A DNA stretch of 64,000 bases from Heteronotia binoei. Taxonomy: Eukaryota. The notes beneath the pieces were generated by a model, which saw only the letters and a program-made list of their open reading frames with translations, ran no database searches and was not told where the DNA came from. Below are positions 1-58,021 of the stretch, piece by piece. Position 1 is the first letter of the stretch, and each line of letters begins with the position of its first letter. The position numbers and the translations under genes are program-made. The stretch spans positions 21,266,001-21,330,000 of the forward strand of contig NC_083227.1 in assembly GCF_032191835.1 (NCBI RefSeq), in the 5' to 3' direction.

Positions 1-974
1 TCTTTCTCACTTGGACTCACAGCAGACTATGCAGTGTGAGTAACTACAGTCGACAGAATAGTTGCCACGCAGTTGCCAATCGACCCACCCACACATTCTT
101 GCAGTCTCCCAAAACTTTGGAGCAAACCAAGTTTGAGAAGGATTGGAGAAAAGCTGGGAAATGTACCACGATGCTGTAGGGAAGAATATTGCGGGGGGGA
201 CTGCTTCCCAAAAGCTTTGAACTCAGGACACATAACGAGCAGGGAAGATCCAGTGCATAAATAGTTGACACCACTAGTAAGGGGTTCTTTTTCATCTGGG
301 GAAGGAAGCTTTGGGAACCAACATTTGGAGAGCACAAGATGTGTCCTGTACTACTGGTTTGTCTTAAAGAACAGTGAAATCTCTCAGAATATGCTCTTTC
401 TGTTGCAGTTCTTGTAGAAACTCCCGTCACAGAAACCATGACTGCCAACACAGAGGAAGCTAACAAAACCGTAACCGAAGAACTGCTGGAAAGCGCAGGT
501 AATGCACATCCCAGCATTGGGAGTGGGAGCCATGTGTGCACGGGCATCAGTGATGTATGTGGAGATGGCTGTTCACATAAGACACAAGAATGCACAGACT
601 AGGGATGCCAGCCTTCAGATGGCACCTGAGGGATTCCCAACATTGCAGCTCATCTCCAGACTACAGAGATCAGTTCCCCAGGAGAAAATGAATTCTATGA
701 CATCACATCCTTGCTGAGCTCCAAACTCTGCCCCTCCCCCACTTCCACCCCCAAATCTCCCAAGAATTTCCCAATCTGGAGCTGGCAGCCAGGGGAGACC
801 TGGCAACCCTACCACAGAGAGGACTTTCTGGCTCAGGGAAGAGTGCATCTGTTGGTCTGGAAGGAAGGGAAACGGGGGACACCTCTTTCCTCAAGGACCT
901 TTACAGGGGTGGTGTGCTTGACTTCTTTTCAAACTGAAATTGACATACTGCCAATATATCAAAACGATGATGAT

Positions 975-1235
975 GACGATATTGGATTTATATCCCGCAC
1001 AATGCTCTGAATCTCAGAGTGGCTCACAATCTCCTTTATCTTTTCCCCGACAACAAACACCCTGTGAGGTGGGTGGGGCTGAGAGAGCTGTCCCAAAAGA
1101 TGCCCTTTCAAAGAAAACTCCTACAAAGCTATGGCTGAGCCAAGGCCATTCCAACAGCTGCAAGTGGAGGATTGGGGAATCAAACCCGGTTCTCCCAGAT
1201 AAGAGTCCACATATTTAACCATACACCAAACTGGC
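975..1235 (-). mobile_element. tRNA-head SINE with L2-type 3' tail (family 2)
   Basis: Reverse complement of the repeated GCCAGTTTGGTGTAGTGGTTAAG...GGGAGAACCGGGTTTGATTCCCC...CCTCACAGGGTGTCTGTTGTG unit. Confidence 0.8.
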
Positions 1236-1546
1236 TCTCATCTGCTACACGGGTGCTAATAATTTCTTGGAAACTTCCATGATGTGGTTTTGGGGAGGGG
1301 GGAACCTGCCTTTTCAGGCAAAGAATGCTGTGAGGGACTTTTTTCCAAGGAAGCTTCCAAGATCTCAGCAAGGAGAGGGCTTTCTTTCTCTACTGGGAAA
1401 AAGGAGAGTGCTTTCCATCAAGGAAACAAGCACAGTCTTGGTCCTAGCCAGGGAGGAGGGGGGTAATCTGTTTGCCACTACTGGCAAAGAACATGGTAGA
1501 ACAATTTTCCCATGGAAGTTTCTAAGATGTGGCTTTGAGGAGGGCA

Positions 1547-1775: not shown

Positions 1776-3614
1776 AAGCTTTAAGGAGGGCATACTTGGC
1801 TGCCTGTATTTGGGAGGAATTTCCTTTTTAAAGAGAATTTTCCTTCTCTTCAGAGTCTCCGAACAGACGTGAGTGTCAAAACACTCCAACCCCACCTATG
1901 AGGAATGAGCTAGAAGGTAGGAATCATTGTTATTGTTTTATCTGCTTCTCAAGCAGACTGTTTCTGATGTTTTCACTGGTGCCCAGGAAAAAAAGCACCT
2001 CAACTCATGTTATTTGCATCTTTTTTTCCAGTGGTGGATAGTGAGGTGGGTGTTGCGCAGCTTTCACCCGCCTCTTGTCTAGCTAATACTAGGACAAAGA
2101 GGAGATGTGTCTGTGGACCACAGAGCACAGCAGAGCACTTGGTGTCACCACCCAGCAAACAGCGTGAGGAAAAGCCTGTGGGAAAAGGTGTGAGGAAAAG
2201 CCAGAGGCTCACAGGAAGGGGTGCAAGAAAGCAGGAAGAACTGAGGAGCAGAAGCACTGCCATGAAGAAATGATGGAGAAGGTGAGGGGTGACTATCAGC
2301 TTCTACAAGAAGCCCTGAAGAGAAACTCCACTGTCCTGGTGACTGCACAGAACACTTTTAAAGATGTTCATGTCACAGCAGCCTTCAGTCCCCACTCCTA
2401 CTACATGCAAGACTTTCTCCACAGTGCTAACACCACAGCATATGTCCACTCAGCTGTGAGGGTGCCACTTTACTCCCCCTGACCAGGACATGATTTTGTG
2501 TTGACACTGTTGTGGCAGAAAATAATAACTGTGGTAAAATTTAAAAAGCTGGAGGTTTGTTAACACAGCTGTAGCTTCTTTATTCAGGACAACCTTTCCC
2601 TAAGGTACCAGTTGCACAAGATGCCTATTGTACCCCCATTTTAATTATTATTGAGAATCTTCATTGATGTTACGGCTACATTGGAGAGTTTGTTACCAGT
2701 TGTGCGAGCTGGTGGTCAGTGACAACGTACTGCACAGTTGTTTGTCATAAAAAGATTTGTTGAAATAATTACTAAGTAAGATGTAGCTTGTGAGAATCTG
2801 TATTTGAATTGTATAATATAGTGTTTTTGGTTGTTTTTTGTCTAATTTTGACACTATTTCCTTGTGCTTTTGCTTATAGTTGCATAAAGAAAAAACACTG
2901 AGGCAGAACACACCCTCTGAAGAAAGAACCGGCAACATTTCTCAAAAGGCGGGAATGCCATCTCCAGACAAAAAACATATAGAAACATTTTCCTCAGGCT
3001 GAAGCAGAAGTAGTTTAGACTATATTTTGCTCACTCCAAGGCTTTCCCCTTCCCTTATCTAGCGATCTTTTATTCTTTATTTACTAATGAAACTTTGTTC
3101 TCTTCCAAAATGGCCGCTACAACACACTGAATTGAGGTTCACTTTCTAGTTCTTGTTTCAACCAGGTTATGTAGAACCTTTTGTTCTACATAAAAGTTCT
3201 GTTTTGAGATATCTGTAACTGATGTAAGTAAATAAACATTGGGCTGTCCATATATAAAGTCAGATGTATGTATGCATTTAAAACCAAACCATTTGAAATA
3301 ACTTTAACCATTAAATACCTCACATTGATGGTCCTGTTCCATTTTCTGTTTCTCAGCGCCCCCCTCCCAACAATCAGTTCATTCCCAGCTATTTTTCACA
3401 TTGTGTAAATGGCATTGCTTATTAGTGCTGAGGTAAATGAACATATATTATTGCAACAGTACATACCTTTACCTAACACAGACTGTCATAACAAAAATGG
3501 ACGTGTGACTTATGTGTGGACATTGTGTACCGTTCAAGCACATGGAGGCACTCTGACGCATCAAAGTGACAAAAAAGATTGTACCTTGAGGTTTCTGAGG
3601 ATTGTTCTACTACT

Positions 3615-8735: not shown

Positions 8736-9622
8736 TTAATCACTCATACTTTTCTCCTGGGCGTACCCTGTCAAGACCTTTAGGGGAGGAGGGGCCAGGG
8801 ACAGATCTCCCCCCTTTGGAGCAATGACACGGTTTCTCCCACCCACCATTGGTTTTTTCACGCACAACAAAGTGCAGTTTCCCAACACAACATAGCCCAC
8901 CGCAGGAGTGTTCAAATGACTTCCCTTCCCACAGGTTTCCCTCTCGTGCTGGACCAAGGAGGCCCTGCGCCGGTAACTCTTTCCACAGTCTTTGCAAATG
9001 TAAGGCCTCTCACCCGTGTGTACACTTTTGTGTTGGCTGAGGTTGGAGCTGGTGCTGAAGCTTTTCCCGCAGTCTGTGCACTTGTGGGGCCTCTCCCCCG
9101 TATGGATCTTCACATGCCTACGCAGCTGAGACTGGCATGGCCACCTTTTCCCACAGTATGAGCATTCGTAGGATTGAGTCTTTGGAGGCAGTCCAAGGTC
9201 CGGACTCGGACTGAAGCTTTTCCTGCCCTCAGCCGCGTGCTCGGGGAGTTTCACTCTGGAAGAGCGCTCATTTAAGCTTCCGCCATCTTCCTCCCTGCAG
9301 TCAAAATCCCTCTGCAGCATCTTCCCTAGAGAATTCTCTGGGGGTTGTTTTGACCCCCGATGTCTTCCCGGTGCTCCATCCCCTAAAGGAACATGGAAGA
9401 GGGTCCTCTGGGGCTTTTCCAAAGAGAGTTCACAGCCTTCCGCTGGTCTGGCTCCCTCCGGTGGATGGTTCTGTCCTTCCTTCTCACTGTCTCGGACAAA
9501 AGCAAAATCCTGATGAAGTTTCCCTCCTGCCCATTCTGTCAGCTTCATGCTGTCTTCCACATGCTCAGATTCCTTGGGAGGAAGATTCTCTGCCTCATTC
9601 TCAATCATCTGCCTATCGCATA
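8736..9622 (-). CDS. Gene A zinc-finger exon (2 C2H2 + 1 C2HC finger, frameshifted decayed tail)
   Basis: Acceptor TTTTCATTCCAG at 9623; YECSYCGKRWPCQSQLRRHVKIH, HKCTDCGKSFSTSSNLSQHKSVH, YICKDCGKSYRRRASLVQHERETC. Confidence 0.85.
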
Positions 9623-12600: not shown

Positions 12601-15600
12601 AATAAAGCTGGCCTACTGTAAGGATAACAATTGACATATGTGAAGTGCCCTGAACCCCAAAAGCTGTATAATTGCTAAATAATCATCATATATATGCACT
12701 AGCCACAGGAACCTTCCATGTCGATTTTTTTTTAAAAAATCCATATGGGAGGGTGATTCCTGGGGAAGAAATATGGGTTTCTGCAAAAATATAAAACCTT
12801 TAAAAAGTAGGATTAAATAAAAGTTTTTAAAACCTTCATAATGCTCTGGAGACTACCTCATGAGATCTCCAACTGCCAACTGTTCTTGTCCCCCCAGAAC
12901 AACTTTGCCAAGGCCCTATGTCAAGAAGGAAGAAAACAAGGAGCGGTTGGGATTGGGGAGGGGGGTAGATTTTTTGCAGGTTCCCCTTCTTGTAAAGTAA
13001 TATATTATCATTGTGGTTTGCAGAGCCTGAGCTCTGAAGATCCAGCTGTAGTAACTAACAGTAGAAGTATCTTATTTTACTATCTGGGAAAGAGTGAGGG
13101 AGTGTGAGAGCCAGAGATTCTCCAAGATCTGTATGCATAATGGCAAATCGTACGCCATCATTGTCTGAACAGAATGCCTACAAGAGGGGACTGGATAAAC
13201 ACATGGAGCAGAGGTATAGCTGGAACACTCTGTCTGGGGCAGTGATGCTCTGTATTCTTGGTGCTTGGGAGGGGGCAACAGTGGGAGGGCTTCTAGTGTC
13301 CTGTTCCCACTGGTGAACCTCCTGATGGCACCTGATTTTTTGGCTACTGTGTGACACAGAGCATTGGACTGGATGGGCCTTTGGCCTGATGCAATATGGC
13401 TTCTCTGATGTTTTTATGTTAACCTCAGAAAACCATTTGCACAGTCTCACCCTATGGACACTTACCAAACAAGCTGGCACTTGCCTCGCCCTCGTGCTTT
13501 GCCTCCCCAGATAGCTGCATCTCCTCACCATCCGACAGATCCTGTTCTTCCTTAGGGGAATGAACAACCACCTCCTCAAAAGGCTCCAGCTCCTGAAACC
13601 AGAGAACAGAGGTGGAGAAAAGTCACAACAGGAAGGAAAGGGCAAGTGCCTGCCCCATTCTATCAGCAACGAAAGCAGTAAAGAAGCCAGCTTCCATTCA
13701 AGAGTGCCACTTCTCGAGAAGGTCAACGATGAAACAGGGTCACATTCAGATGCTCATCAACTTACTACAAAAGCTCTTTTACAGCATCATAAGGATGGGA
13801 CTTTTCTAATTTTTGTGACACAACTTAGTGTGAGATTTTTCTGTTAGTTCTGTGATATGTAAGGACCATTTGTGTTTTTATGAACTATAAAATATTTTAT
13901 GAACTATAAAATATAGAAGCCACAAATCATAGATTGCTTGTTATTCTTAGTCTGAGCACTGGTCCATCTCGCTGTCATTTTACACCAACCGCCAGCAGAG
14001 GTCCAGGAGGTTAGGCCAAGAAGGCTCCTTCCCAAAAGGTGCCAGGGAGCGAACGTGGGATACTCAGCCCGCAAGGTGGATGTCCTGCCCCCAAGTCACA
14101 GCCGCCTCCCCATTTGGACTTGCCCAATGGCAACAATGCACTCACCTGCCTCCCTTGTCTCTCTGCCTCCTCCAGCCTCCGCAAGAACGCCTCAGCCAGG
14201 GTCACTGCCTGAAGGCAGCTCTCAGGCCCTCCTTCCCGCACCCAGCTCTGCATTTCCTCTGGCAAGATGCTCAGGAACTGCTCCAAGACCAGCAAGTCTA
14301 GGATCTCTTCTTTGGTCCGTCTCTCTGGTTCCAGCCACTGACAACAGAGTCCCTGGAGTTGCTGGCAAACATCCTGGGGCCCTTTGGCCTCCCAGTAGCA
14401 GAAGCGCCTGAACCGCCGGCAGTTCACCTCCAGGCCAACATTCTCCTCCTTCAGCCTCTCTTCTTTCACTGTCACAGGGGGATCTGGGCTTCCCCAGGCC
14501 TTCCGGGGTGCTTTGTGGAGGCCTGACGGGGTCTTAGTCTCAAGCTCTCCTCTAGGCTGCTGGCTGGCACGTCTCACATCCCTGAAGGAATCCTGAAAAG
14601 ACTTTGTATCCTCCCACGACTGCGGCGGAGGCATCAGTGGGCTCCGCCATCCTGAGTGAGGGAACTCCACCGTCTTCAGGAACTCCTGCCATTGGGAGTC
14701 CCACCGCTGCTGCAGCCCCTCCTCAGGTTCCTGCTTAATTTCCTTTGGAGCCACCCCATTTGGGAGCTCCCTGCTGGTTCCTACTGGGGCAGCGCTAGGG
14801 TCCCTTGCTCCTTTTAGTGGTCCATCCGGATCCAGCTTCTCCATCTTGACATCCGCACGCTCTGTAAATGACAGCGCAAACAAGAGTTTCTGCCTCTTGC
14901 CCCAGTGATAGTCAGATCATTTATTATTACATTTCTAAACGGCTAAGCAGCTAACTAGCTAGCTAACATCTAGCTAACTGATTGGTACTTTGATCATTGG
15001 TCAAAATTCCAATCTGTTTTCAGAATTTTCCCTTCTATGCCCTGACCTGGGACAGCCCAGGCAAGCCCAGTCCCATCAGAACTCGTAAGCTAAGAAGGGC
15101 CGACCCTGGCAAGAACTTGAGATAGGAGACCAAAGAATGATGAACACGTGGAATTCACTGCCACAGGACGTGGTGGTGACTGCAAGCACAGCCAGCTTCA
15201 AGAGGGGATTGGATAAACATATGGAGCAGAGGTCCATCAGTAGCTATTAGCCACAGTGTATTGTTGGAACTCTCTGTCTGGAGCAGCGATGCTCTGCATT
15301 CTGGGCGCTTGGGGAGGAGCTATGATGCTCTGCATTCTGGGTGTTTGGGGAGGCGCTAAGGCTCAGCGGTAGGGTACTTCCCTGGCATACCAATGGTCAG
15401 GAGTGGAATTCTAGCAGGAGCTCCTTTGCACAGTGGGAAGGCTTCTAGTGTTCTGGCCCCACTGGTAGACCTCCTGATAGCAACTGGGGTTTTTTTGGCC
15501 ACTGTGTGACACAGAGTGTTGGACTGGATGAGCCATTGGCCTGATCCAACATGGCTTCTCTTATGTTCTTATGAGACCTCCAAGGAATATTATGGCCAGG

Positions 15601-24002: not shown

Positions 24003-24874
24003 TCAGCATGGCTTCTTAGCCACGTGGAGTTTCTGATGTCGAAGAAGGCCACTGCGACGGGTGAAACATTTCTGGCACTCTGCACATTCATACGGCTTCA
24101 CTCCTGTGTGGGTTCTCTCATGCTGAATGAGGTACGACCTCCGGCTGAAGCTTTGTCCACACTCTGAACACTCGTAGGGTTTCTCCCCCGTGTGGATTCT
24201 TTCGTGTTCTGTAAGGACCGAGCTGTAACTGAAGCTTTTCCCACACTCTGAGCATGTGTAAGGTTTTTCTCCAGTATGCATTCTCTGATGGATGAGGAGA
24301 TGGGATTGCCTGCTAAAAGTTCTCCCGCACTCGGAACACGTGTGCTGATTCACTTTGGCGTGGATTTCCTGTGGTCTAGAAACTTCACAGGGCTGAGTAA
24401 ACCTTTCCCCAAAGTCTGACCATATAGAAGGTCTCCCTGTGGCATGTGTTCTTCCACGCATATTAAGATGCACTTTCAGCTTAAAGCTCTTGCCCCACTC
24501 GGGGGGTTTGTATGTTTTTTCTCCTGTGTCTATTTGCTGAAACTCTAGAAGGTTCAAACTCTGGCGGAGACTTTTCCCGCTATCAGCACCTGCCTTTTTC
24601 CTCTTACGTCTGCCCACTCCCTCTTCAAAGGTCCTTTTGGGAAAACGTTTCCCAGCTCCCTCACAAAGAAAAGTTTGTTCTGTTGTCTTCCTCAGATGGT
24701 TTTCCTGGTAATTTTCAGGTCCAGCCAAACTTTTGCGCATCTGCTCCCACTCAGGAACTTGGGAAAATTCCCCTTCTTTACCTTCCCGTGATGCTCCAGG
24801 GGCGCCCACTTCTTTTGGTCCTTCCAGCTGAAGATCCACCTCTTCCTCCTTTACAATGACATGCCAGTCATCTG
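24003..24874 (-). CDS. Gene B zinc-finger exon (4 intact fingers preceded by ~3 degenerate ones)
   Basis: TTTGTTTCTTCCAG acceptor; [23 protein letters not shown] ... [23 protein letters not shown]. Confidence 0.9.
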
Positions 24875-37078: not shown

Positions 37079-38053
37079 TCATCATCACCACCACCATCAT
37101 CATCAGAATTTATAAACTTCCCTTCCCCAAAGGGCTCAGGGCAATGAACATCAGCATAGGGCATGCAAACAGTAAAAATACAATAGATAATAAATAAAAG
37201 CAATAAACGTCTTCCAGATAATCCATGACAAACATAAGATTTCACTCTCTCCATTGGTAGATTGTGGACCAGACTTGGTGAAGGCCATTTTGAGAGTCCA
37301 TTGCTGTAGGCCTGGTGGAACATCTCTGTTCTACATGCCCTGCAGAACTGAACTAGGTCCCGCAGAGCATAGATGTCACTAGGTAGAGAGTTCCACCAGG
37401 CCAAGGCCAGGGCTGAAAATAATACTCTTTAGTATTTACAGATATTCTGAAGTAAATGCAATAATGGCATTCACTGGAAGCTTAAGAAGGGCATTTGTGA
37501 TTTAATCCAGGATCCTGTTTCCCATAGTGATTCCCCTAGGTGCCTCCAGGAAGCAGCCAGCAGGATATCAAAGGGATTATTCCTCCCTTGCTGCTATCTC
37601 CCAACACCTGGTGCTCAAGGGCACCCTGCCTCTGAAACTGGGGGTTCCATTTAGCCACCCTTAGCGATGCAATTTATATGAACTATCTAATTAATTTCTC
37701 TAATGCCATTTTAACCCCCTAAGCAGGTAGCTATTGCTGTATCATGACACACAGAATTTTTAGGTTTCACTCCAATCAACCATATCTCTATAATGGTTTT
37801 CTTTTGTCTCCATTTTTTTCCCTTGGTCCCAGAAAAGTGTAATGTTATCTGGAAGTATCATCTGGTTCCACCATTTGTTGAAGAGCCCTGATGCTTTGAC
37901 AAGATCCCACCAGCCTTGCTGGATTAGCCTTTCATCCTGATGGAGCTTCAGGGGTGCTGTGAGAAAACCAAGGATTACCACAAGGGATGGCGATAAGGGG
38001 CGTGCATTTGTCTGCGCACCACTGAGGGGTGGAACTGCCTCTTGGGGAAGGAA

Positions 38054-38812
38054 ATGGCTGCGACGCAAGAGACGACAATCACTCAGGAGTCGCTAAAGCA
38101 GGGGAATCAGATCAAAACAGAGGAACAGGAGTCAGTTGACTCTGAACCAGAGGAAGAAATGGAAGAAGCTGATGGTCTCACAACAGGGAGGACTGGTGAA
38201 GTTCTGCTGGAGGAATCTCCACAGCTCGTGAAGCAAGAGCCAGAAGAAGAGCCATCCCGAAACTGGGATGCCCAGTTGCAGGAATTCCTGAAGACACTTC
38301 AGGCTCCTCCTTCTATAGGGGATGGCCTACAATTGCCTGAACCAAGGCAATGGAATGACTGTGGAACATCTCCAGTGCCTTCCAAGGGCGTGGCAGAGGC
38401 CACCAAGTGGCCTGGTGGATTGTGGGCTTCCCAACCCCAGCTGATTCCCCTTGGAGAAGTAAAGCAAAACCACGAGGCTGAGTGCTGTGGGAAGGAGAAA
38501 GTCCAAACTGGAGATACTGTTGGGGCGGAGATGTGGCGCCAGCGCTTCAGGAAGCTCTGCTATCGAGAAGCTGAGGGCCCTCGAGAGACTTGCAGGCAGC
38601 TGCAGGAGCTTTGCTGTCAGTGGCTGAGGCCTGAGAGATGCACCAAGGAGCAGATCCTGGATCTCCTGATCCTAGAGCAGTTCTTGGCTGTCCTGCCGCC
38701 AGAGATGCAGTGCTGGCTCAGGGAGAGTGATCCGGAGAACTGCACCCAAGCGGTGACCCTGGCGGAGGATTTCCTTCAGGCGCAGCAAGGTGGCAAGGGA
38801 TGGGAACGGCAG
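38054..38812 (+). CDS. Gene C SCAN-domain exon (coding part)
   Basis: GAAATGGCTGCG start, CAG|GTGAGA donor; probable acceptor at 37832. Confidence 0.9.
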
Positions 38813-41800
38813 GTGAGAACAAGACCACCCCCCCCCCCATTTAAAAAAAAGAGATTGTCCCACATGAAGTGAAGGTCCCTGGGGAAACGAACAAAACTAC
38901 AGTAAAGTGAAGTATAAAGTCAGAACAAAGTTTGAGACGAGTGGCAACTGTAAGACCAACAAAATTTTATTGTTTGTTGGTCTTAAAGGTGCCACTGAAC
39001 TTGGACCTTTTTTTTTGCTGCTTCAGACCAACATGGCTACCCACCAGTTTGGTGTAGTGGTTAAGTGTGCAGACTCTTATCTGGGAGAACCGGCTTTGAT
39101 TCTCCACTCCTCCACTTGCAGCTGCTGGAATAGCCTTGGGTCAGCCATAGCTCTCACAGAGTTGACCTTGAAAGGGCAGCTTCTGTCAGAGCTCTCACAG
39201 GGTGTCTGTTGTGTGTGGGGAGGGGGGGGAGGTAAAGGAGATTGTAAACCACTCGGAGACTCTTTTGGAGTGCAGGACGAGATATAAATCCAATTATTTC
39301 TTCTTCTTCCTCTGATATCCAGCAGTGCACCTCTAGAATATGATATAACTGTGCAGCCCTGGAATGTGACACAGCAATGCCCACCTGAACTGGGATGGTC
39401 TCTTTTCCACAGAAGAGAGGCAAACCCAATCCAGTCTCTGAGACCCTAGGTAGGCCGGCATGACACGAAGTCTGGTTTGGTTAGGCTTGGCAGACATTTT
39501 GGCTGCACTGAAGGGCTAAGAGGCATCCATTTTCTGATCCTGGGAATGAAGACACTCAGGCCCAGAGATGGAAACATTGCGGGCAAAGCAGGAACATTAG
39601 TTCCCACTTACCTCACCTCTTGCATAAGCCTACCATTTTGATTTAAGGAAAATTAATATTCCCCAATAAAAAGCTGGTTTTCTCTCTTCCTCTGTAAAAT
39701 CAGAGCACTCAGTTTGGGGGGTTGTGTAATAGACAATAGCCCTGTCTTGGATAGCCCATGCTAGTGAGAGCTCATCAGACCTTGGCAGCTAAGCAGGGTT
39801 TGACCTGGCTAGAATTTGTATAGCAGTCCACCAAGGGGATCCAGGGTCATTACACGGAAGCAGGCAATGGCGAGCCACTTCCGAATGTCTCTTGCCTCGA
39901 AAACCCTGTGGGGTTGGTGAAATTCATCTGAGACTTGATGGTGCTTTCCACCCCCATCCTGTAATAAGGCTCTAATGCCCATGGTTGTTGGGAAATAATG
40001 CTGGTATAAAATGCCCATACGAAAAACTCCTTGTTAATGCAGTTCCCGCCAAATAAATAACCCACAAGGTGGTTAAAGTTACATGTGAAGCTGTCTTATG
40101 CTGAACCAGGAACCTAAAAGGTTAATATACAACTTAAAGACCCCAAAATTAAAAGCAAAATATAGAATTAAACCATAAGCAAAAATACATCTCTTTATTA
40201 TAGAAAGTTAAAAACATTTAGCGGCCTATCACTAGCCTCCTTATGAACATATATGAAGCTGCCTTATACTGAATCAGACCCTGAGTCCATCAAAGTCGGT
40301 ATTGTCTGCTCAGACTGGCAGCGGCTCTCCAGGGTCTCAAGCTGAGGTTTTTCACACCTCTTTGCCTGGACCCTTTTTAGTTGGAGATGCCAGGGATTGA
40401 ACCTGGGACTTTCTGCTTACCAAGCAGATGCTCTACCACTGAGCCACCATCCCTCCTTTGTAAAATAAAACAACAATGGGAAACCACTTGACCTGACATG
40501 TTTCAACCTAGAATAGTCTTCTTCAGAGGTCAAACAAGCATATACACATACAGGCTCATGATGCATGCTGTACTTTTTATTACTAAGTCAGTAAAGTTAT
40601 TTGGATTGGATTGGCTCATGATACAAAATACAATAAATCAATAAACCAATGATGGACCAAAAAGAAAGTGTTTTAATACAGTGTCAGAGGCTTAAAGATG
40701 TAATTGAGGCCTCTTATAATGCAGCCTTATGTCCTATTCAAGGGTATACGTGTCACATCATGTGTCTTATTGTATGCCTCACCAGAATGGTCCAGAATTA
40801 ATCCAAGTCATTGTCAGATCAGAGCCAGTATGCCAAGAATTGTGTGTATTGAATCAGGTCATTAGTCCATCAAAGTCTGTATTGTCTCCTCTGACCAGCA
40901 GGGACTCTTCAGGAGTTCATGAAGACAGGCCCTGCCCAAAAGAGGTCTTTCCCATCACCTCCTGCCTGGTCCTTTTATTTGGAGACACTGGGGATTGAAA
41001 CCTGAAGCTTTCTGCATGCCAAGCAGAGGCCTTCCCTCTGAGCCACAGCTTCTCCCCAATTTCCAAATCGTTGTGCAGACTGAGATACTTTTTTATTTCC
41101 GTAATTTATGGTCTGCTTTTCTCACTGAACTCAAAGCGAATTACACTGGGCGAGTCAGTACTATCAACAGAATGGGACGTTCAGTAATAATGAAGTAGGA
41201 TCAGAGAAGTCTGGAACTGATCGACCAATAGAATTGAATTTGTACTACTGTGTATTGGAGTTTGCCAGATGTACCCCCCCCCCTTTTATCAAAACAGTTC
41301 TTTGTTGCTTCCTGATTTCATTTTTAATTGCCACCCCTCCCCCTTTCAGATTAAGGGCTCTTCAGAAGACATGTTTGTAAATCTACCCAAGACAAGCAAG
41401 GAATTGCTAGGAGCAGCAAAGAGACAGTGTTTCATGGAAGCCAAGCAGTGCGTTGATGGAAGTGCAAATGTTTCAGGTAAGAGAACATGAGAAGCCATGT
41501 TGGATCAGGCCAATGGCCCATCCAGTCCAACACATCCAGTCAGTATCATGCAGTGGCCAAAACAACAACAAAAAAAACAGGTACCATCAGGAGGTCCACT
41601 AGTGACACCAGACCACTAGAAGTCCTCCCACTGTTGCCCCCCCTCAAGCACCAAGAATACAGAGTATCACTTGCCCCAAACAGAGAGTTCCATCTACGTA
41701 TTGTGGCTAATAGCCACTGGTGGACCTCTGCTCCATATGTTTATCCAATCCCCCGTTGAAGTCATCTGTGCTTGCAGCCGCCGCCACCACCTCTGGAAGT

Positions 41801-44800
41801 TAATTCCATGTGTTAATCACCTTTTGGGCAGGGCCTGTCTTCATGAACTCCTGAAGTTGTTACAGCTCTACCTGTAGTGCTGCTTTGAACTGAATGGGCC
41901 CTTTTCCAGGTCTGTGGACAGTAGTAGCAGTTATATGTTTCTGAAATTGCCCAGAAAGGGATTAACACCTGTCTCTTCTTTGCCTACTGCCTGTCTGGAT
42001 GTTTCTTTTAGTCATTGGCTGACCTGCCATGATGTCATGGATGGCTAGGGATGCTACCAGGAACAGCATATTTCTTTCAAGTACTGTGTCTTTTGCAATG
42101 GAAGCTGCTTCTGCTCTGGCTGTGTATCTATATTAGCAAAGCTTGAAGTTAGTTTTCTGGGGCATACCAGGGCAAAGAGCAACAGAAGCAGAATTACTTA
42201 GTTGTTGAAGGGGAATCTTCCCCTTATCCCTCTCCCTCCCCCTGGCCTGGTGTAGGCAGACGGTTGTAGACAGCCAACAAGGCATGGAGGCCAAGGCCTT
42301 CCCCTGATATTGCCTTCTGGCACTGGGATTCAGAGGCTTAGTGCCCTCATTCACTATGGCTTCTACCCACTGATAGATTTATCTAATCCCCTTTTATAAC
42401 AACTTAATAAAAGCTCTACAGGATCAGACCATTAGCCCATCTACTGCAACATCCCGTCTCCCACAGTGGCCAACTAAGGCCAACAACAAGGCATAGAGGC
42501 CGAGGCCTTCCCTTGATGTTGTCTCCTGGCTCTGGGATTCAGAGGCTTAGTGCCTCTGAATGTGGAGGTTCTCCTCAATCACCACCAGGACTTTTATTGT
42601 AGCAGGAACTCTTTTGCATGTTAGGCCACACCCCTCTTATGTAGCCAATCCTCCAAGAGCTTACAGGGCTCTTAGTACAGGGCCTACTGTAAGTTCTGGG
42701 AGGATTGGCTACATCGTGGAGGTGTGGCCTAATATGCAAAGGAGTTCCTGCTACAAAAAAAGCCCTGGTCACCACTGATAGACTTATCCTACACAAATCT
42801 ATCTGATCCCATTTTAAAAGTTCAGGACAGACAAAAGGAAATACTACATTACACACTGTATCTGAAGAAGTATGTTTGCACATGAAAGCTTATACATTAA
42901 ATAAAACGTCATTGGTCTTAAAGGTGCCACTGGACTCCAACTTTGTTCTGCTTTACACAGAGGATGATTAAAATGTGGAATTCACTGCCAAAGGATGCAG
43001 TGATGGCCACAGGAATAAGCAGCTTTTAAAGGGGATTAGAGAGATTCACGGCGGATAAGTCTTTAAGTGGCTCCTAGCCATGGTGACTGAGGGGAACCTC
43101 CATATTCAGAGGCACTGATCCTCTGAATCCCAGAGCCAGGAGGCAACATGAGAGAAAGGCTTTGGCCTCTATGCCGTGACGTTGACCCTCCAGAGGAACT
43201 GGTTGGCTCCTGTGTGAGACAGGATGCTGGACTAGATGGACCATTCATCTGATCTAGTAGGACTCTTCTTACGTTCAGGATTTGGAGATCTTCTTCGGCC
43301 CTCGCCTCTAAAAGATGCCAGAACTATGCTAAAAGGGGATGTTGACACCCACAGATCATGTTCAGAAAGAATCTTGAACACTGTTTCCCCTTTATCCCCT
43401 TGAACACTGTTTTCCCCTTTATCAAACAATAGGTGGCCCATCAATTAGTCTATTGACCATTGGCGACTGATGGATTTTGGCCAGCATGCAGATTTCATTA
43501 ATCTCAAGTACCATCACCTAAATTTACTTCTGGATTCTCCCCTTTTCCTATTGGCAGATAGGCAGGCCCTATATGGTCTGCCTATCTGCGGGACCACGTT
43601 TCTCCATATGTTCCCCAGAGAACACTGCACTCAGGAACACAAAATCTGTTATTTATGCCCAGACCAAGGGAGGCCAGACTGCTCTGCACGAGCTAGGGCC
43701 TTCTCAGTGGCAGCACCAACAATGTGGAATGCCCTCCCAGAGGCCATAAGGGCCCTGCGGGATCTCTCCCAATTCTGCAGGGCCTGTAAAACTGAATTGT
43801 TTCAACAGGCCTTTAATATCTAACAGAACTGCCACTCTACACAGCTGAGCAACGTCATTTATGAAGTATTATATCCACCACAAGATCACTGTCAGAGGAA
43901 AGAAAGTTATGATCCCACTTATACTGAACTTTGAGTAGAAACATGAAATGTATTTTGTTAATTTTATTGTTTTAAATTGTAATTTTAAATTGTTTTTTGA
44001 TTGATGGTTAGCTGCCCTGAGTCTGCTTGTGGAGAGGGCGGGATAGGAAACTAAAGAAAATTTAAAAAATAAAATTTTCTTCCAGCAGGCAATGGGTGGA
44101 TGAGCGAACCTGAGGAGGAGCTGAAGCCTTTCTTGGAAAACCCTGAGGAAGAGGAACCACCAAAGATGCTGTTGGAAACATCCAGAGAGAATGATTTCTC
44201 ACGTGGTAGAAAAGGGGATGAGAATCCATGCAGGGCAGAGAGTCAGAACGGAAATAACAGAGAGACGGAAGCCGCTGGGCCTGTTTTTCCTGAAGGCACT
44301 GATAAAAGTCTCACTGAAGCCATAGCCCTGCCGCAGGTGAGCAGCATGAAATGTGAGGCGCACAAGGAAAGCTTTGGTCAAAATCCGCTCCTTTTGACTT
44401 CTGAGAGGAGCCAGGCAGGAGAGAAAACTTATACGTGCTGGCATTGTGGCCAAAGCTTTGGTAGCAGCTCAGATCTCGTGTCCCATGAGAGAACCCACGT
44501 GGGGGAGAAACTGTATAAATGTGCCCACTGTGGAGAAAGTGAGAGAACCCACACAGGGCAGAAGCCCCATAAATGCTCACACTGTGGGAATACCTTTGGG
44601 TGGAACTCGCAAGAGGGAATCCATGCTGGCGAGAAGCCTTATACCTGCTCTGAGTGTGGGAAAAGCTGCAGTCAGAGATCAGATCTCCTTAAACACCAGA
44701 GGACTCACACTGGGGAGAAACCTTACAAGTGCACTGTGTGTGGGAAAAACTTCACAAACATCTCAGGTCTCAAAGTCCACCAGAGGATCCACACGGGCGA

Positions 44801-45902
44801 GAAACCGTACAAATGCTCGCACTGCGGGAAATGTTTCAGTTGGAGCTCACACTTCATGTCGCATGAGAGAATCCACACGGCGTTGTGCTCGTACTGTGGG
44901 AAAAGCTTCAGCCAAAATTCGGACCTCGTTGAGCATGAGCGAACCCACACAGTGAAGGAGTCATTTGCGTGCTTTGCCTGTGGGAAAGCTTTTGATGTCA
45001 GTGCAGAACTGGTTGCGCATGTCCGGACCCACAAAGAGAAGCCTTTTGAGTGCTCGGTCTGTGGGAAGACCTTCCGGAACAGCTTGCAACGAATTGCCCA
45101 CCAGAAAGTCCATACAGGAGAGAAGCAACATAAATGCTCCCACTGTGGGAAAAGTTTTAGCCAGAAGCAGAGCTTGATTATTCATGAAAGGATCCATACA
45201 GGAGAAAAACCATATAAATGCTTAGTCTGTGGGAAAAACTTCAGAAACCTGCCAAATCTTAAATCGCACGAAAGGACCCATACAGGAGAGAAACCATACA
45301 AATGCTCCTACTGTGACAAAAGTTTTCGCTGGAGCTCTCATCTGGTGCTGCATGAGAGAATTCACACAGGAGAGAAGCCCTATAGATGCTCAGACTGTGG
45401 GAGAGCCTTTGACCGGAGGTCAAACCTTCTTGTGCATGTGAGAATCCACACCGGGCAGAAACCTTACAACTGTTCCGACTGTGGGAAAAGCTTCACCTCC
45501 AATTCTGTTCTTCTTCGACATCAGAAAATCCACACAGGAGAGGAACCTTGTACGTGCTCTCAATGCGGGAGAATCTTCTGGCAGCGGTCAGACCAGACTG
45601 ACCAAGCTGGAGAGAAGGGCTCGAAATGTTCGGAGTGCTTGAGAAGCCGCTACCTGAGTTCTGACCTGGTGGTACGGGCGAGAAACTGTGTGGGGGAAAA
45701 GCTGTTTGAATGCTCGATCTGTGGGAAGAGTTTTCGGAATAGCTCCCACCTCCTCAACCACCAGAGCGTCCATACAGGTGTTCAGCCATATCAATGCTCA
45801 GACTGTGGGCGGAACTTTGTGAGAAGGCCCAATCTGTTAGCTCCTGTGAGCAACCCTGCAGGGCAGAAACCGTACAAGTGCTTGGATTGTGAGAAGAGCT
45901 AG
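38054..45902 (+). CDS. Gene C: SCAN + degenerate KRAB-A + C2H2 zinc-finger protein (~900 aa); coding exons 38054-38812, 41350-41476, 44086-45902
   Basis: 759+127+1817=2703 nt in a continuous frame with GT-AG introns; [59 protein letters not shown]; ~13 intact C2H2 fingers. Confidence 0.88.
39045..39307 (+). mobile_element. Family 2 SINE
   Basis: Full unit homologous to the others. Confidence 0.75.
39740..39945 (+). mobile_element. 5S rRNA-derived SINE
   Basis: CTCATCAGACCTTGGCAGCTAAGCAGGGTTTGACCTGG 5S-like head plus GCAGGCAATGGC...CTTGCCTCGAAAACCC tail. Confidence 0.6.
40243..40456 (-). mobile_element. Young tRNA-derived SINE (family 1)
   Basis: Reverse complement of the 4498 unit. Confidence 0.85.
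41350..41476 (+). CDS. Gene C 127-nt phase 0-1 exon, degenerate KRAB-A
   Basis: CCCTTTCAG|...|GTAAGA; [43 protein letters not shown] aligns without gaps to the KRAB-A consensus; canonical KRAB-A exon length and phase. Confidence 0.8.
42586..42767. mobile_element. Palindromic MITE (hairpin family) inside a CR1 fragment
   Basis: Near-TSD ATCACCAC/GTCACCAC. Confidence 0.8.
43560..44060 (+). mobile_element. L2 LINE 3' fragment
   Basis: [43 protein letters not shown]; tail GCCCTGAGTCTGC...AGGGCGGGATAG. Confidence 0.8.
44086..45902 (+). CDS. Gene C zinc-finger exon (~19 finger positions, ~13 intact)
   Basis: TTTTCTTCCAG|CAG NAGNAG acceptor; 600-aa ORF of TGEKPY-linked C2H2 fingers. Confidence 0.93.
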
Positions 45903-53047: not shown

Positions 53048-53749
53048 TCAAGAATCATCCATGAAGTAGTTTGCCAGGGCCTCTCGCACCAAGTTCCCGT
53101 CCTGTGTGTCCTGGGCAGATGTGGGGAACTTCAAGTGCCCCTCAGGAGGTTGGTCCCACACTCCATCTTGTGCCCACGGCCCATCGAGCAAGGCATGCCC
53201 ACGGTTCTCACAGATATTGTGCAGCACGACCGAGCCTACCACCACAGGGATGATGTTTTCCTCCGCGACCTCCAAACGGGTGGCCAGGCACCTCCACCGC
53301 CCCTTCAGCCGCCCAAAGGCATGTTCAGTCACCTTCTTGCAGTCGTTCAGGCGGGAATTGAACCGCTCTTCATGAGGATTGAGGTCGCCTGTGAAAGGTC
53401 TCATGAGCCACTTCTTCAGAGGGTAGGAATCATCACCCAAGATCAGAGGTGGAATCTCCACATCACCAAGGGTCATTGTAGGGTTCCCAGGGACGAATGA
53501 CCCCTGGTCCATTGCCTCGCAGAGAGCCAAGTTTCGAAAGAAGGAGCCGTCCTTATCTTTTCCGCACCAGCTGAGCTCAATGTCAATGAAACGGCCCCTG
53601 TGGTCCACTGTCCCTTGCATCGACATGGGGAAAAAACCCTTCTGGCTGACATTGGTTCCCTTTCGAACAGTGCAGATGATGGGGATGTGGGTCCTGTCTA
53701 TGACCCCCACACAGTTGGGAAACCCCATTTCTGCAAAGCCCTCCATAAC
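53048..53749 (-). CDS. Harbinger-derived gene, DDE catalytic-domain exon
   Basis: 233 codons plus stop; D207, D256, D295, E331. Confidence 0.9.
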   Translation of the reverse strand, partial: VMEGFAEMGFPNCVGVIDRTHIPIICTVRKGTNVSQKGFFPMSMQGTVDHRGRFIDIELSWCGKDKDGSFFRNLALCEAMDQGSFVPGNPTMTLGDVEIPPLILGDDSYPLKKWLMRPFTGDLNPHEERFNSRLNDCKKVTEHAFGRLKGRWRCLATRLEVAEENIIPVVVGSVVLHNICENRGHALLDGPWAQDGVWDQPPEGHLKFPTSAQDTQDGNLVREALANYFMDDS

Positions 53750-56700: not shown

Positions 56701-58021
56701 TTCTAATATGCAAATGAGTTCCTGCTACAGCCAGCAGCAAGCAGAACCAAGCCCGGGTAGCTCTGCCCATGCTTGGGTCCAGAGGAGAGCGATGAAGATG
56801 GTGGTGAGGGGTCTAGAGACCAAGTCCTATGAAGGAAGGTTGAGGGAGCTGGGTATGTTTAGCCTGGAGAGGCAGCAGCTGAGAGGTGATATCATCACCA
56901 TTTTCAAGTACTTGAAGGACTGTCATATAGAGGATAGTGCAGAATTGTTTTCTGTGACCCCGGAAAATAGGACCAGAACCAATGGCTTGAAATTAAATCA
57001 AAAGAGTTTCCATCTCAACACTGTGAAGAACTTCCTGACCGTCAAAGTGGTTCCTCAGTGGAACAGGCTTCCCCAGGAGGTGGTGGGCTCTCCTTCTTTG
57101 GAGGTTTTTGAGCAGAGGCTAGATGGCCATCTGACAGCAATGAGGATCCTGTGATTTTTAGGGGGAGGTGTTTGTGAATTCCCTGCATTGTGCAGGGGGT
57201 TGGATTAGATGACCCTGGAGGTCCCTTCCAACTCTATGATTCTGACTTCCAGGTGCCTTCCTAGACAAAAGACCCACCTAGCCATACCCACTTTCTAAAA
57301 ACACTTCATGGGTGCCAGTAAAGGTGTCGCCAAACACCATGGTGCCAACGAGCACCACGTTGGGGACCTCCCCTGCTCTAAATTTAAAAAAAAATGTATT
57401 ATTAACATCAGCACAAAATGCTGGAGCCCATCCTCCTGACGCAAAAGGGCGTACCTCTTTGGGGTCTTGGAGAGCCACCACGTCCTTGAAGAGCAGCTTC
57501 TCAATGGCCAGGCAGACCTCGATGAAGACCTCCCCGACGGTGGAGCGCCCGACGCCGAAGTGGGCGGCCACGGAGCGGTAGCACTCGGTGGTGGCCAGCT
57601 TCCAGAGGGCGATGCCCACCCGCTTCTCCACGCTGAGCGGGGCCCTCATGGTGGTGGTCTGGCGCTGGAGCTCGGGGCGCAGCTTGTCGCAGAGCTCCAG
57701 GAAGGTGGCCTTGGTCATGCGGAAGCCCTGGAGCCACTGGCGGGGCTCCCACGTCTCCAGCACCACCCGTTCCCACCAGTCCTGGCTGATCTGGCGCGAC
57801 CAGAAGCGGTGGGGCCCGGCGCTGAGCTCTTCCACCAGCAGCCGGGTCTCGTTGTCCGGGCAGAGGTCGGGGAGGAGCTGGTGCAGCAGGGCCAAGTGGT
57901 TGGCCATCACCCGCCGCATGGTGCGCCGGGCCCGGGAGGCGACGGCGGTGCGGTGCAAGTGCAGGCGCACCAGGTTGTGGGTGGCCAGGATCACCAAGAT
58001 GATGGCTTCGAGGTTCTCCAT
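53048..58021 (-). CDS. Spliced PIF/Harbinger transposase-derived gene (DDE_Tnp_4, HARBI1/ALP1-like family), 422 aa; coding exons 58021-57455 and 53749-53048; probably domesticated
   Basis: 567+702 nt, phase-0 intron GAG|GTACGC...TTTTCATTTTGAAG|GTT. The junction LQDPKE-VMEGFAEMGFPNCVGVIDRTHIPI restores the Harbinger consensus. Motifs FWSRQISQDWW, FRMTKATFLELC, LSVEKRVGIALWKLAT, FGVGRSTV, LGDDSYPL, EHAFGRLKGRWRCL, VLHNICE. No stops or frameshifts. Confidence 0.9.
53951..54160. mobile_element. hAT MITE (CAGTGTTCCCTCTAAG family) in the transposase intron
   Basis: 8-bp TSD ATTATGTG at 53943-53950 and 54161-54168. Confidence 0.9.
54190..54810 (-). mobile_element. CR1 LINE 3' fragment in the transposase intron
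   Basis: WTRTNGLKLNQKSLWLNIMKNFLTVRAVPQWNRLPQEVV...LEVFKQRLD. Confidence 0.8.
56093..56176 (+). mobile_element. 5S rRNA-derived SINE head
   Basis: CCCAGTCTCATCAGATCTCAGAAGCTAACAGGGTCG...CTTGGATGGGAGACC...GGAATACC. Confidence 0.6.
56275..56730. mobile_element. Hairpin MITE interrupted by a family 2 SINE (56425-56703)
   Basis: MITE arm resumes CTAATATGCAAATGAGTTCCTGCTACA after the SINE; duplicated CTAATA. Confidence 0.75.
56790..57245 (+). mobile_element. CR1 LINE 3' fragment
   Basis: GLETKSYEGRLRELGMFSLE...QWNRLPQEVVGSPSLEVFEQRLD; CCAACTCTATGATTCT end. Confidence 0.85.
57455..58021 (-). CDS. Harbinger-derived gene, N-terminal/HTH exon (CpG island)
   Basis: 189 codons, strongly GC3- and CpG-rich; upstream acceptor TTTTTAG at 58057. 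Confidence 0.88.

What the first reader, a model, noticed from the sequence alone, without database searches (positions are those of the whole stretch)
409..58021. Possible Harbinger transposase + Myb-partner pair bracketing a SCAN-ZNF cluster
Established: Harbingers encode two interacting proteins (transposase and Myb/SANT-like), and some vertebrate SCAN-ZNFs (ZSCAN20, ZSCAN29, ZKSCAN2) carry Myb/SANT-like domains of this type. Seen: a transposase-derived gene at one end, a Myb-partner-like exon set at the other, and three SCAN-ZNF genes with eroded KRAB between them. Inference: this may be a locus where Harbinger modules are recruited into a zinc-finger chromatin-regulatory cluster, with the transposase-like protein as a KRAB-independent cofactor (ALP1/ALP2-like). 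This is a hypothesis from co-location only.
Basis: inference. Interest (0 to 1): 0.7.

Follow-up and report, generated by a model that had tools for sequence, protein, structure and literature searches.

The report
Harbinger transposase and Myb genes in gecko zinc-finger cluster
A gecko zinc-finger gene cluster holds an old, well-conserved gene derived from a Harbinger transposase and, 51 kb away, two young fast-evolving Myb genes of the kind Harbinger transposons carry, but nothing yet shows that they work as a pair.

Summary
The window is Heteronotia binoei (Bynoe's gecko) CM063329.1, about 21,266,001-21,330,000.

**Observation: mostly holds.**
- At 58021-53048 (-) lies an intact two-exon, 422-aa gene derived from a Harbinger transposase.
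- Three SCAN plus C2H2 zinc-finger genes lie between the two ends.
- At 409-2273 (+) lie the last three coding exons of LOC132572205.
- A tandem paralogue, LOC132572206, lies 9 kb further upstream.
- No KRAB remnant was found.
- The two genes do not bracket the cluster. SCAN zinc-finger exons continue beyond both ends.

**Interpretation: only partly supported.**
- The transposase gene is squamate-wide, under purifying selection (dN/dS about 0.15), and flanked by SCAN zinc-finger genes in five other squamates.
- The Myb genes were found only in H. binoei. They evolve at dN/dS about 1.
- No Myb match lies within 10 kb of the transposase orthologue in those five species.
- The Myb genes show no match to the C-terminal region of a turtle transposon's Myb gene.

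Most likely these are two separate Harbinger-derived genes in one fast-turning-over cluster. Partnership is untested: no RNA run was listed and no multimer tool was available.

The parts
409..498 (+). Coding exon 2 of the Myb_DNA-bind_4 gene LOC132572205 (Myb-2, P0048). Phase 1-1, 90 nt.
   Evidence: Acceptor ttgcag| and donor |gtaatg read. The translation equals P0048 residues about 141-169. tblastn gives 100% to L003 21688-21774.
1854..1916 (+). Coding exon 3 of Myb-2. Phase 1-1, 63 nt.
   Evidence: Splice sites read. It encodes the ESPNRRECQNTPTPPMRNELE stretch of P0048 and is 80% identical to P0046 residues 134-158.
2032..2273 (+). Terminal coding exon of Myb-2, a basic tail, with the stop at 2271-2273.
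   Evidence: Translation. The exhaustive search finds P0046 at E 7.7e-23 and 78% identity. It is 100% identical to P0048 residues 191-270.
8736..9608 (-). Zinc-finger exon of SCAN zinc-finger gene A (3 fingers).
   Evidence: Pfam zf-C2H2 and zf-H2C2_2, E 1e-16.
14011..14883 (-). SCAN exon of gene A.
   Evidence: Pfam SCAN, E 2.9e-37.
24003..24974 (-). Zinc-finger exon of SCAN zinc-finger gene B.
   Evidence: Pfam zf-H2C2_2, E 2e-29.
27214..28329 (-). SCAN exon of gene B.
   Evidence: Pfam SCAN, E 4.8e-40.
38042..38872 (+). SCAN exon of gene C, which is convergent with the transposase gene.
   Evidence: Pfam SCAN, E 3.7e-39. It is 60% identical to the convergent neighbour of the Paroedura orthologue and 44% to the Anolis neighbour, against 36-39% to paralogues.
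44100..45902 (+). Zinc-finger exon of gene C. Pfam finds 11 zf-C2H2 and 14 zf-H2C2_2 matches.
   Evidence: Pfam zf-H2C2_2, E 2e-102. Its C-terminus matches the Sphaerodactylus neighbour's ZNF exon.
53048..53749 (-). Exon 2 of the Harbinger transposase-derived gene (codons 190-422 plus stop). It holds the DDE_Tnp_4 domain with the D-D-E triad present.
   Evidence: Pfam DDE_Tnp_4, E 1.3e-20. 89% identical to P0001. Acceptor ...ttttgaag|. Triad alignment.
57455..58021 (-). Exon 1 of the Harbinger transposase-derived gene (codons 1-189). This is the N-terminal helix-turn-helix region.
   Evidence: tblastn gives 89-92% to P0001 from Met1. Donor GTACGC. Orthologues carry PF26138 (DUF8040) over this part.

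Best explanation
The window is a stretch of a large squamate SCAN zinc-finger gene array in Heteronotia binoei. It contains two separate kinds of host gene related to Harbinger transposons.

(1) An ancient domesticated transposase gene. It encodes 422 aa in two coding exons. It arose no later than the common ancestor of geckos and iguanians and is kept under purifying selection. Its position is fixed: a same-strand SCAN zinc-finger gene lies upstream, and in geckos a convergent one lies downstream. I infer that it now acts mainly as a non-catalytic nuclear or chromatin adaptor, because the catalytic glutamate is replaced in two gecko lineages while the rest of the protein stays conserved. Its necessary Myb-type partner, if it has one, is more likely a conserved gene elsewhere in the genome.

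(2) Two tandemly duplicated small Myb_DNA-bind_4 genes (230 and 270 aa), seen only in this species. Their reading frames are maintained, but they evolve at dN/dS about 1. I infer that they are a young, separately acquired derivative of a Harbinger Myb gene, possibly a DNA-binding competitor or repressor of gecko Harbinger elements.

Their presence 51 kb from the transposase gene reflects residence in the same gene-birth-prone cluster, not a co-domesticated pair.

Shown: gene structures, domains, orthology, synteny and selection regimes. Inferred: all molecular functions and the independence of the two origins.
For: - Identity of the window: positions 1-3375 are 100% identical to L003 21278-24652 of H. 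binoei CM063329.1.
- Transposase gene, orthologues: they are 422-423 aa and 83-92% identical over exon 1 in Paroedura, Sphaerodactylus, Gekko, Euleptes, Sceloporus and Anolis; Podarcis muralis (88%) is represented only by a 244-aa partial model.
- Transposase gene, structure and selection: the exon 1/exon 2 junction falls at the same residues (...PKE|VM...) in H. binoei and Paroedura, and the matches and open frames in Gekko, Sphaerodactylus, Sceloporus and Anolis fit the same junction. dN/dS is 0.14-0.16, with dS 0.35 to Paroedura and 0.94 to Anolis.
- Transposase gene, expression: an uninterrupted 422-aa ORF on a 1.4-kb contig of run SRR12657023 looks like spliced mRNA of an orthologue.
- Synteny: a SCAN zinc-finger gene ends 4.5-6.7 kb upstream on the same strand in all five other species. 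Its C-terminal finger motif is visibly shared in four of them, with Anolis diverged.
- Triad: D1 and D2 are kept in all seven orthologues. E is replaced by G in Gekko and Sphaerodactylus.
- Myb genes, domain: Pfam Myb_DNA-bind_4 at E 1.5e-11 (P0046) and 1.6e-12 (P0048).
- Myb genes, link to transposons: 31-33% identity (E 2e-9) to the convergent Myb ORF of a Chrysemys Harbinger copy. That copy's transposase is related to the domesticated gene, at 56% identity over the matched 60% of exon 1.
- Myb genes, distribution: only the two H. binoei proteins were found by two word searches and one exhaustive search.
- Myb genes, selection: between paralogues dS is 0.32 and omega is 1.05 for the Myb exon. 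All indels are in frame. The chance that all four exons stay free of stops under neutral substitution is 1.5-2.6% per copy.
- No Myb tblastn hit lies within 10 kb of the transposase orthologue in five squamates.
- SCAN zinc-finger genes are markedly expanded in squamates (bioRxiv 10.1101/2025.03.03.638093). Co-location with them therefore carries little information.
Against: - A Myb_DNA-bind_4 gene within 60 kb of the only known squamate-wide gene of this transposase lineage is not what chance most readily gives. I could not measure how many such Myb genes the genome holds.
- The two genes are convergent, as are the transposase and Myb ORFs in the related turtle element.
- Myb partners evolve fast and are hard to detect by BLAST (PMC9710019). 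Missing orthologues may therefore be a detection or annotation gap.
- Synteny was tested only to 10 kb on each side, whereas the H. binoei genes are 51 kb apart.
- The paralogue dS (0.32) is close to the Heteronotia-Paroedura dS (0.35). On that figure the Myb gene should predate the split, yet no orthologue is annotated in Paroedura or Gekko.
Confidence: 0.6

Rival explanations
1. Ancient co-domestication from one insertion. Transposase and Myb genes derive from a single Harbinger insertion in an early squamate. SCAN zinc-finger gene births then pulled them apart. They still form a complex in which Myb targets and imports and the transposase acts as effector, and this complex co-operates with the neighbouring SCAN zinc-finger proteins in the manner of ALP1/ALP2.
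For: - Both module types are present.
- The orientation is convergent, as in the turtle element.
- The published model predicts same-insertion co-domestication followed by growth of the intergenic region (PMC9710019).
- The catalytic E is lost in two orthologues, which recalls ALP1 and HDP1.
- The Myb C-terminal tail is basic and looks like a nuclear localisation signal.
Against: - No Myb orthologue was found in any other annotated squamate.
- There is no Myb hit within 10 kb of five orthologues.
- Omega is about 1 for Myb against 0.15 for the transposase gene.
- The Myb genes show no similarity to the transposon Myb's C-terminal part, the region that binds the nuclease in known pairs (PMC7282668).
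- No Myb remnant lies just downstream of the transposase gene.
Confidence: 0.12
2. The Myb 'genes' are decaying remnants of a Harbinger element's Myb ORF, duplicated along with their surroundings. Automatic annotation has modelled them as proteins, but they have no function.
For: - Omega is about 1 in the Myb exon.
- No orthologues were found.
- No RNA run was listed.
- No recognisable C-terminal coiled-coil region was found.
Against: - Both copies keep four open exons with canonical splice sites, and all indels are in frame, at dS 0.32.
- In a substitution-only neutral simulation one copy stays open with probability 0.015-0.026. Both copies staying open comes to under 0.001, before counting indels.
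- The terminal exon has omega 0.56.
Confidence: 0.2
3. The Myb genes are fragments of a ZSCAN20/ZSCAN29-type gene (SCAN + Myb + zinc fingers). Rearrangement within the cluster split them off, so they are not direct derivatives of a transposon Myb gene.
For: - They lie inside a SCAN zinc-finger array.
- ZSCAN20 is reported as a putative Harbinger-Myb-derived gene (PMC9392472).
Against: - They lie on the strand opposite to the overlapping SCAN model.
- Each starts with its own Met in the Myb exon.
- No SCAN or zinc-finger exon on the + strand was found in L003.
- No sequence comparison with ZSCAN20 or ZSCAN29 could be run.
Confidence: 0.08

Closest known systems
HARBI1 / NAIF1 (vertebrate domesticated Harbinger transposase and Myb-like partner)
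   Same: The gene is single-copy, carries DDE_Tnp_4, is derived from a Harbinger transposase and is under purifying selection. In H. binoei the D-D-E triad is retained, as reported for HARBI1. A Myb-type gene exists in the same genome.
   Different: The gene is restricted to squamates and encodes 422 aa. NCBI names its orthologues variously (HARBI1, ALP1-like, uncharacterized). The catalytic E is lost in two orthologues. The nearby Myb genes are Myb_DNA-bind_4 and lineage-restricted, not a conserved partner. Identity to true HARBI1 was not tested.
ALP1 / ALP2 and HDP1 / HDP2 (Arabidopsis co-domesticated Harbinger pairs acting on chromatin; PMC7282668, PMC5339849)
   Same: It is a transposase-derived protein whose conserved role probably does not need catalysis, and it sits in a chromatin-regulator context.
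   Different: ALP1 has lost two of the three triad residues and HDP1 has lost the triad. Here the triad is complete in H. binoei. No link to PRC2 or to a histone acetyltransferase complex is known. Partnership with a Myb protein is not shown.
Insect PIF co-domestications from one insertion (DPLG7/DPM7, APLG/APM, LPLG2/LPM2; PMC9710019)
   Same: Transposase-type and Myb/MADF-type genes lie in one chromosomal neighbourhood. The criteria used there (synteny, purifying selection, loss of transposon hallmarks) are met by the transposase gene.
   Different: In insects the two genes are adjacent (for example 97 bp apart) and both are conserved and under purifying selection. Here they are 51 kb apart with three genes between them, and the Myb genes fail the conservation and selection criteria.
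ZSCAN20 / ZSCAN29 / ZKSCAN2 (SCAN zinc-finger proteins with Myb_DNA-bind_4 domains)
   Same: Myb_DNA-bind_4 and SCAN zinc-finger modules occur together at one locus.
   Different: The Myb domain is in separate small genes on the opposite strand. It is not fused to SCAN or zinc fingers.

Membership tests
Domesticated PIF/Harbinger transposase gene | DDE_Tnp_4 transposase domain | tested here: met
   Pfam PF13359, E 1.3e-20, on exon 2.
Domesticated PIF/Harbinger transposase gene | Single-copy orthologues at a syntenic position in distant species | tested here: met
   One locus was found in each of Paroedura, Gekko, Sphaerodactylus, Sceloporus and Anolis. Each has a same-strand SCAN zinc-finger gene 4.5-6.7 kb upstream.
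Domesticated PIF/Harbinger transposase gene | Purifying selection | tested here: met
   Nei-Gojobori dN/dS is 0.14-0.16 in three species pairs.
Domesticated PIF/Harbinger transposase gene | Loss of transposon hallmarks (adjacent Myb ORF, terminal inverted repeats, multiple copies) | tested here: inconclusive
   No Myb ORF lies within about 7 kb downstream or 6 kb upstream in the window, or within 10 kb in five species. An intron is present, whereas the Chrysemys transposon copy and the Rhineura paralogue are intronless. Terminal repeats and genome copy number were not tested.
Harbinger Myb-like partner-derived gene | Myb/SANT-like (Myb_DNA-bind_4 or _5, or MADF) domain homologous to transposon-encoded Myb proteins | tested here: met
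   PF13837 at E 1.6e-12 (P0048) and 1.5e-11 (P0046). Identity of 31-33%, E 2e-9, to the Myb ORF of a Chrysemys Harbinger copy.
Harbinger Myb-like partner-derived gene | Conserved orthologues under purifying selection (domestication criteria of PMC9710019) | tested here: not met
   Only the two H. binoei paralogues were found. Omega is 1.05 in the Myb exon. The searches were limited by word matching and by length range.
Co-domesticated Harbinger transposase/Myb pair | Both genes co-occur across the species that carry the transposase gene | tested here: not met
   No Myb hit lies within 10 kb of the orthologue in five squamates, and no Myb orthologue was found in their proteomes. Larger distances were not testable.
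Co-domesticated Harbinger transposase/Myb pair | Retained interaction: Myb C-terminus with nuclease N-terminus (PMC7282668) | not testable with these tools
   No multimer prediction was available. As an indirect test, the C-terminal ORF of the turtle transposon Myb gene has no match in the window or in L003.
Co-domesticated Harbinger transposase/Myb pair | Co-expression | not testable with these tools
   The look-up of sequencing runs listed no RNA run for window 1-2700, so read laying could not be used.
ZSCAN20/29-type SCAN-Myb-zinc-finger protein | SCAN, Myb and zinc fingers in one polypeptide | tested here: not met
   The Myb genes are separate 230- and 270-aa models on the strand opposite the SCAN zinc-finger model.
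KRAB zinc-finger gene (eroded KRAB) | KRAB A/B box exon between the SCAN and ZNF exons | tested here: not met
   No PF01352 hit at E<=1 in 130 coding-strand pieces. No A-box-like motif in six frames.

The most novel reading that the evidence does not exclude
The squamate transposase-derived gene and the Myb genes are the two halves of one ancient Harbinger insertion. That insertion was captured inside the expanding SCAN zinc-finger array. The Myb half evolves fast and is therefore invisible to sequence search in other species. The transposase half serves as a KRAB-independent effector or adaptor, brought to chromatin by the Myb proteins and/or by the neighbouring SCAN zinc-finger proteins. The 200-million-year linkage to the upstream SCAN gene reflects shared regulation.
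Probability: 0.1. Interest if true: 0.75.

Novelty: new member of a known kind. Interest (0 to 1): 0.45.

Why it matters
Domesticated Harbinger genes repeatedly become chromatin regulators, as with HARBI1/NAIF1, ALP1/ALP2 and HDP1/HDP2. Squamates have the largest known expansion of SCAN zinc-finger genes, and how these act without KRAB is still being worked out.

A squamate-wide, strongly conserved transposase-derived gene locked between SCAN zinc-finger genes is a concrete candidate cofactor to test. The fast-evolving Myb genes in the same array may show an early stage of capture of a Harbinger Myb module.

The genes are already predicted in public annotations but appear unstudied. The present evidence is co-location plus evolutionary pattern. 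It does not establish function.

Tried and rejected
- **Pfam on the window itself.** I scanned all stop-free pieces of 40 aa or more in 1-8700, and of 52 aa or more in 45.9-64 kb. No Myb/SANT hit appeared inside the window. The domain was found only through the orthologue and paralogue route.
- **RNA evidence.** The look-up of sequencing runs on window 1-2700 listed no RNA run, so read laying was never used. Expression and co-expression in H. binoei remain untested.
- **A frameshifted coiled coil.** I suspected that the +1 frame after the Myb-2 stop (2168-2479) was a frameshifted relic of the transposon Myb coiled-coil region. tblastn with the turtle ORF gave no match, so I rejected the idea.
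- **Word searches.** Searches with P0046 and with the Myb domain of P0048 returned only the H. binoei proteins. PDB sequence search returned nothing. The Atlas only reaffirmed the family.
- **KRAB.** The Pfam and regex searches were negative.
- **P0016 (Podarcis paralogue).** The locus look-up found no record.
- **Walking along the Paroedura chromosome.** I could not get beyond 10 kb each side, because further look-ups need exact full products of multi-exon genes.
- **The 422-aa H. binoei product.** For the same reason it was never searched as one sequence. The exons were searched and analysed separately, and only substitution counts were summed.
Full report
**Where the window comes from.** Window positions 1-3375 are 100% identical to L003 21278-24652. 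L003 is Heteronotia binoei GCA_032191835.1, CM063329.1:21244724-21269375. The window is therefore CM063329.1, about 21,266,001-21,330,000. It contains no N.

**The transposase end**
- Pfam finds DDE_Tnp_4 (E 1.3e-20) in the ORF at 53048-53755 (-).
- tblastn with the Paroedura picta protein P0001 gives two colinear, gap-free blocks covering all 422 residues.
- Exon 1 is 58021-57455 and exon 2 is 53749-53051, with the stop at 53050-53048. The donor is GT and the acceptor AG. The finding's end coordinate, 58021, is the start codon.
- A search with exon 1 found orthologues of 422-423 aa in Paroedura (92%), Sphaerodactylus (91%), Gekko (91%), Euleptes (89%), Sceloporus (84%) and Anolis (83%). Podarcis muralis (88%) is represented only by a 244-aa partial model. 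NCBI names these proteins variously 'ALP1-like', 'putative nuclease HARBI1' or 'uncharacterized'.
- Nei-Gojobori dN/dS, computed exon by exon with counts summed, is 0.155 (H. binoei-Paroedura, dS 0.35), 0.143 (H. binoei-Anolis, dS 0.94) and 0.157 (Paroedura-Anolis).
- A 1429-bp contig of run SRR12657023 carries an uninterrupted 422-aa ORF of an orthologue (87% identity). This looks like spliced mRNA.
- More distant relatives (47-67% identity over the part of exon 1 that matches) fall into three groups. Turtles hold many copies of varied length. One Chrysemys copy that I looked up (L004) is a single intronless ORF. A second squamate clade appears in Salvator, Rhineura and Podarcis.

This is a squamate-wide domesticated Harbinger transposase gene. 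It is already predicted in public annotations.

**The catalytic triad.** In an alignment with the turtle relatives, D1 (xDxTH) and D2 (LILGD) are kept in all seven orthologues. The glutamate 35 residues after D2 is kept in H. binoei, Paroedura, Euleptes, Sceloporus and Anolis. It is glycine in Gekko and Sphaerodactylus. Residues next to the triad (DGTH, GDPAYP and the HD motif) have changed throughout. A protein this conserved that tolerates loss of the catalytic E in two lineages probably has a conserved role that does not depend on cutting DNA. This is an inference.

**The zinc-finger genes**
- Three SCAN exons (E 1e-37 to 1e-40) pair with three C2H2 exons, giving genes A (-), B (-) and C (+).
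- No KRAB was detectable. Pfam at E<=1 on 130 coding-strand pieces of 30 aa or more between and around the exons gave no PF01352 hit. Loose A-box patterns matched nowhere in six frames. 'Eroded KRAB' is not supported.

**The Myb end**
- Nothing in 1-8700 hits a Myb/SANT family.
- The sequence does show good splice sites for + strand exons at 409-498, 1854-1916 and 2032-2273. All are phase 1 and in one frame.
- The exhaustive protein search with the terminal exon found P0046 (E 7.7e-23, 78% identity). P0046 is H. binoei LOC132572206, 230 aa, with Myb_DNA-bind_4 at residues 15-95 (E 1.5e-11).
- Its locus shows two tandem Myb_DNA-bind_4 genes on the + strand. The second is LOC132572205 (P0048, 270 aa, Myb_DNA-bind_4 at residues 9-99, E 1.6e-12). 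Its last three exons are exactly the window exons.
- Its Myb exon (L003 19326-19742) lies about 1.5-1.95 kb upstream of window position 1.

**Are the Myb genes of Harbinger type?**
- A Chrysemys Harbinger copy (L004) has a transposase, P0034, related to the domesticated gene at 56% identity over the 60% of exon 1 that matches.
- That copy carries a convergent Myb ORF just downstream. P0046 and P0048 match its Myb domain at 31-33% identity (E 7e-9 and 2e-9).
- This shows that the partner of the related transposon lineage is of the same Pfam family. It does not show descent from that lineage.
- The C-terminal ORF of the turtle Myb gene has no match in the window or in L003. [quoted passage not shown]

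**How the Myb genes evolve**
- The two paralogues sit in a tandem segmental duplication of roughly 9 kb. Introns and 3' flanks align at 73-80%.
- Between them, the Myb exon has dS 0.32 and dN/dS 1.05. The domain part has dN/dS 0.87 and the linker 1.57. The terminal exon has dN/dS 0.56 (dS 0.205). All indels are in frame.
- A substitution-only neutral simulation leaves all four exons free of stops in 1.5-2.6% of trials per copy. The reading frames therefore look maintained, but the protein sequence is barely constrained or is diversifying.
- Two word-based searches (all of P0046; P0048 residues 1-125) returned only these two proteins. The exhaustive search added nothing credible.
- These searches see only certain length ranges and only annotated proteins. 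Absence elsewhere is suggestive, not proven.

**Synteny**
- In Paroedura, Gekko, Sphaerodactylus, Sceloporus and Anolis, a SCAN zinc-finger gene ends 4.5-6.7 kb upstream of the transposase orthologue on the same strand.
- Four of these upstream genes end in a visibly shared finger motif; the Anolis one has diverged. Their ZNF exons are 68-83% identical among geckos and 37-51% between geckos and iguanians. They evolve much faster than the transposase gene.
- Gene C is 60% identical in its SCAN exon to the convergent downstream gene of Paroedura, against 36-39% to paralogues. Its ZNF exon C-terminus matches that of the Sphaerodactylus neighbour.
- tblastn with P0046, P0048 and the turtle Myb ORF finds nothing within 10 kb of any of the five orthologues.
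- In H. binoei, an annotated 1439-aa SCAN/zf-C2H2 model on the minus strand runs across both Myb genes and beyond both ends of the loci. The Myb genes are thus nested in the array and do not sit at its edge.
- SCAN zinc-finger genes are markedly expanded in squamates (bioRxiv 10.1101/2025.03.03.638093).

**Reading.** The co-location is real, and both modules are Harbinger-related. The two genes nevertheless have very different histories.
- The transposase gene dates to at least the gecko-iguanian ancestor, is strongly constrained and is syntenically fixed.
- The Myb genes are so far specific to H. binoei, tandemly duplicated, and evolving at omega about 1.
- In published co-domestications from one insertion, the two genes are adjacent and both are conserved (PMC9710019). 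These genes do not fit that pattern.

I therefore favour independent residence in one gene-birth-prone cluster (confidence 0.6). Points that keep the pair model alive at about 0.1:
- the orientation is convergent, as in the turtle element;
- Myb partners are known to evolve fast;
- the synteny test reached only 10 kb;
- I do not know how many Myb_DNA-bind_4 genes the genome holds.

Earlier notes of this scan report Harbinger transposons with Myb genes, and a KRAB-Myb-dead-transposase fusion gene, elsewhere in this genome. Together with the turtle KRAB-transposase model P0018, these suggest that reptiles reuse Harbinger modules often. I did not test those notes.

**Limits**
- No RNA run was listed, so expression, splicing and co-expression in H. 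binoei are untested.
- No multimer prediction was available.
The exons were handled separately.

Noticed in passing
window 28363-30264 (+): A 633-aa open reading frame with a reverse-transcriptase domain (RVT_1, E 7e-35), so a LINE copy that looks recent. It sits about 30 bp from the outer end of the gene B SCAN-exon ORF. Further RT fragments lie at 32761-33405, 56441-57154 (inside the intron of the transposase gene) and 61055-61792.
   Followed up: partly
window 10574-11109: A tandem array of 8 copies of a 67-bp unit (94% matches) in the intron of SCAN zinc-finger gene A. A 91-bp unit occurs 2.1 times at 9849-10037.
   Followed up: partly
window 7788, 7947, 20801, 36814, 39057, 50162, 56441, 63078: A SINE-like repeat whose 20-mer core occurs 8 times in the window, against 0 expected by chance. 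It produces the recurring '...[18 protein letters not shown]...' pseudo-ORFs.
   Followed up: partly
P0013, P0015, P0016; L005 10001-11341: A second squamate clade of Harbinger transposase-derived proteins (Salvator, Rhineura, Podarcis; 432-447 aa). They are about 63% identical to this gene over the matched 60% of exon 1. Both catalytic aspartates are replaced by glycine. The Rhineura gene is intronless and lies within 10 kb of an HLH gene, with no SCAN zinc-finger gene in reach. This looks like a separate domestication.
   Followed up: partly
P0018 (Emydura macquarii, 488 aa): An annotated turtle protein that combines KRAB (PF01352) with DUF8040 and DDE_Tnp_4 of the same Harbinger lineage. 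Its triad residues are present in the alignment. It is a possible KRAB-transposase fusion. P0041 (the PARP11 isoform) and P0043 in Pelodiscus also match this transposase; Pfam lists a DDE_Tnp_4 segment only for P0041. They may be annotation chimeras.
   Followed up: no
L003 10001-14652 and 19326-23550; L010: The two Myb_DNA-bind_4 genes lie antisense inside an annotated 1439-aa SCAN zinc-finger gene model that spans more than 33 kb. That model may be a chimera of neighbouring SCAN zinc-finger genes, including gene A of the window.
   Followed up: partly
result list: The H. binoei product of the transposase gene did not appear at 100% identity in the protein collection, although both Myb genes of the same assembly did. 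The gene may be missing from, or modelled differently in, the H. binoei annotation.
   Followed up: no
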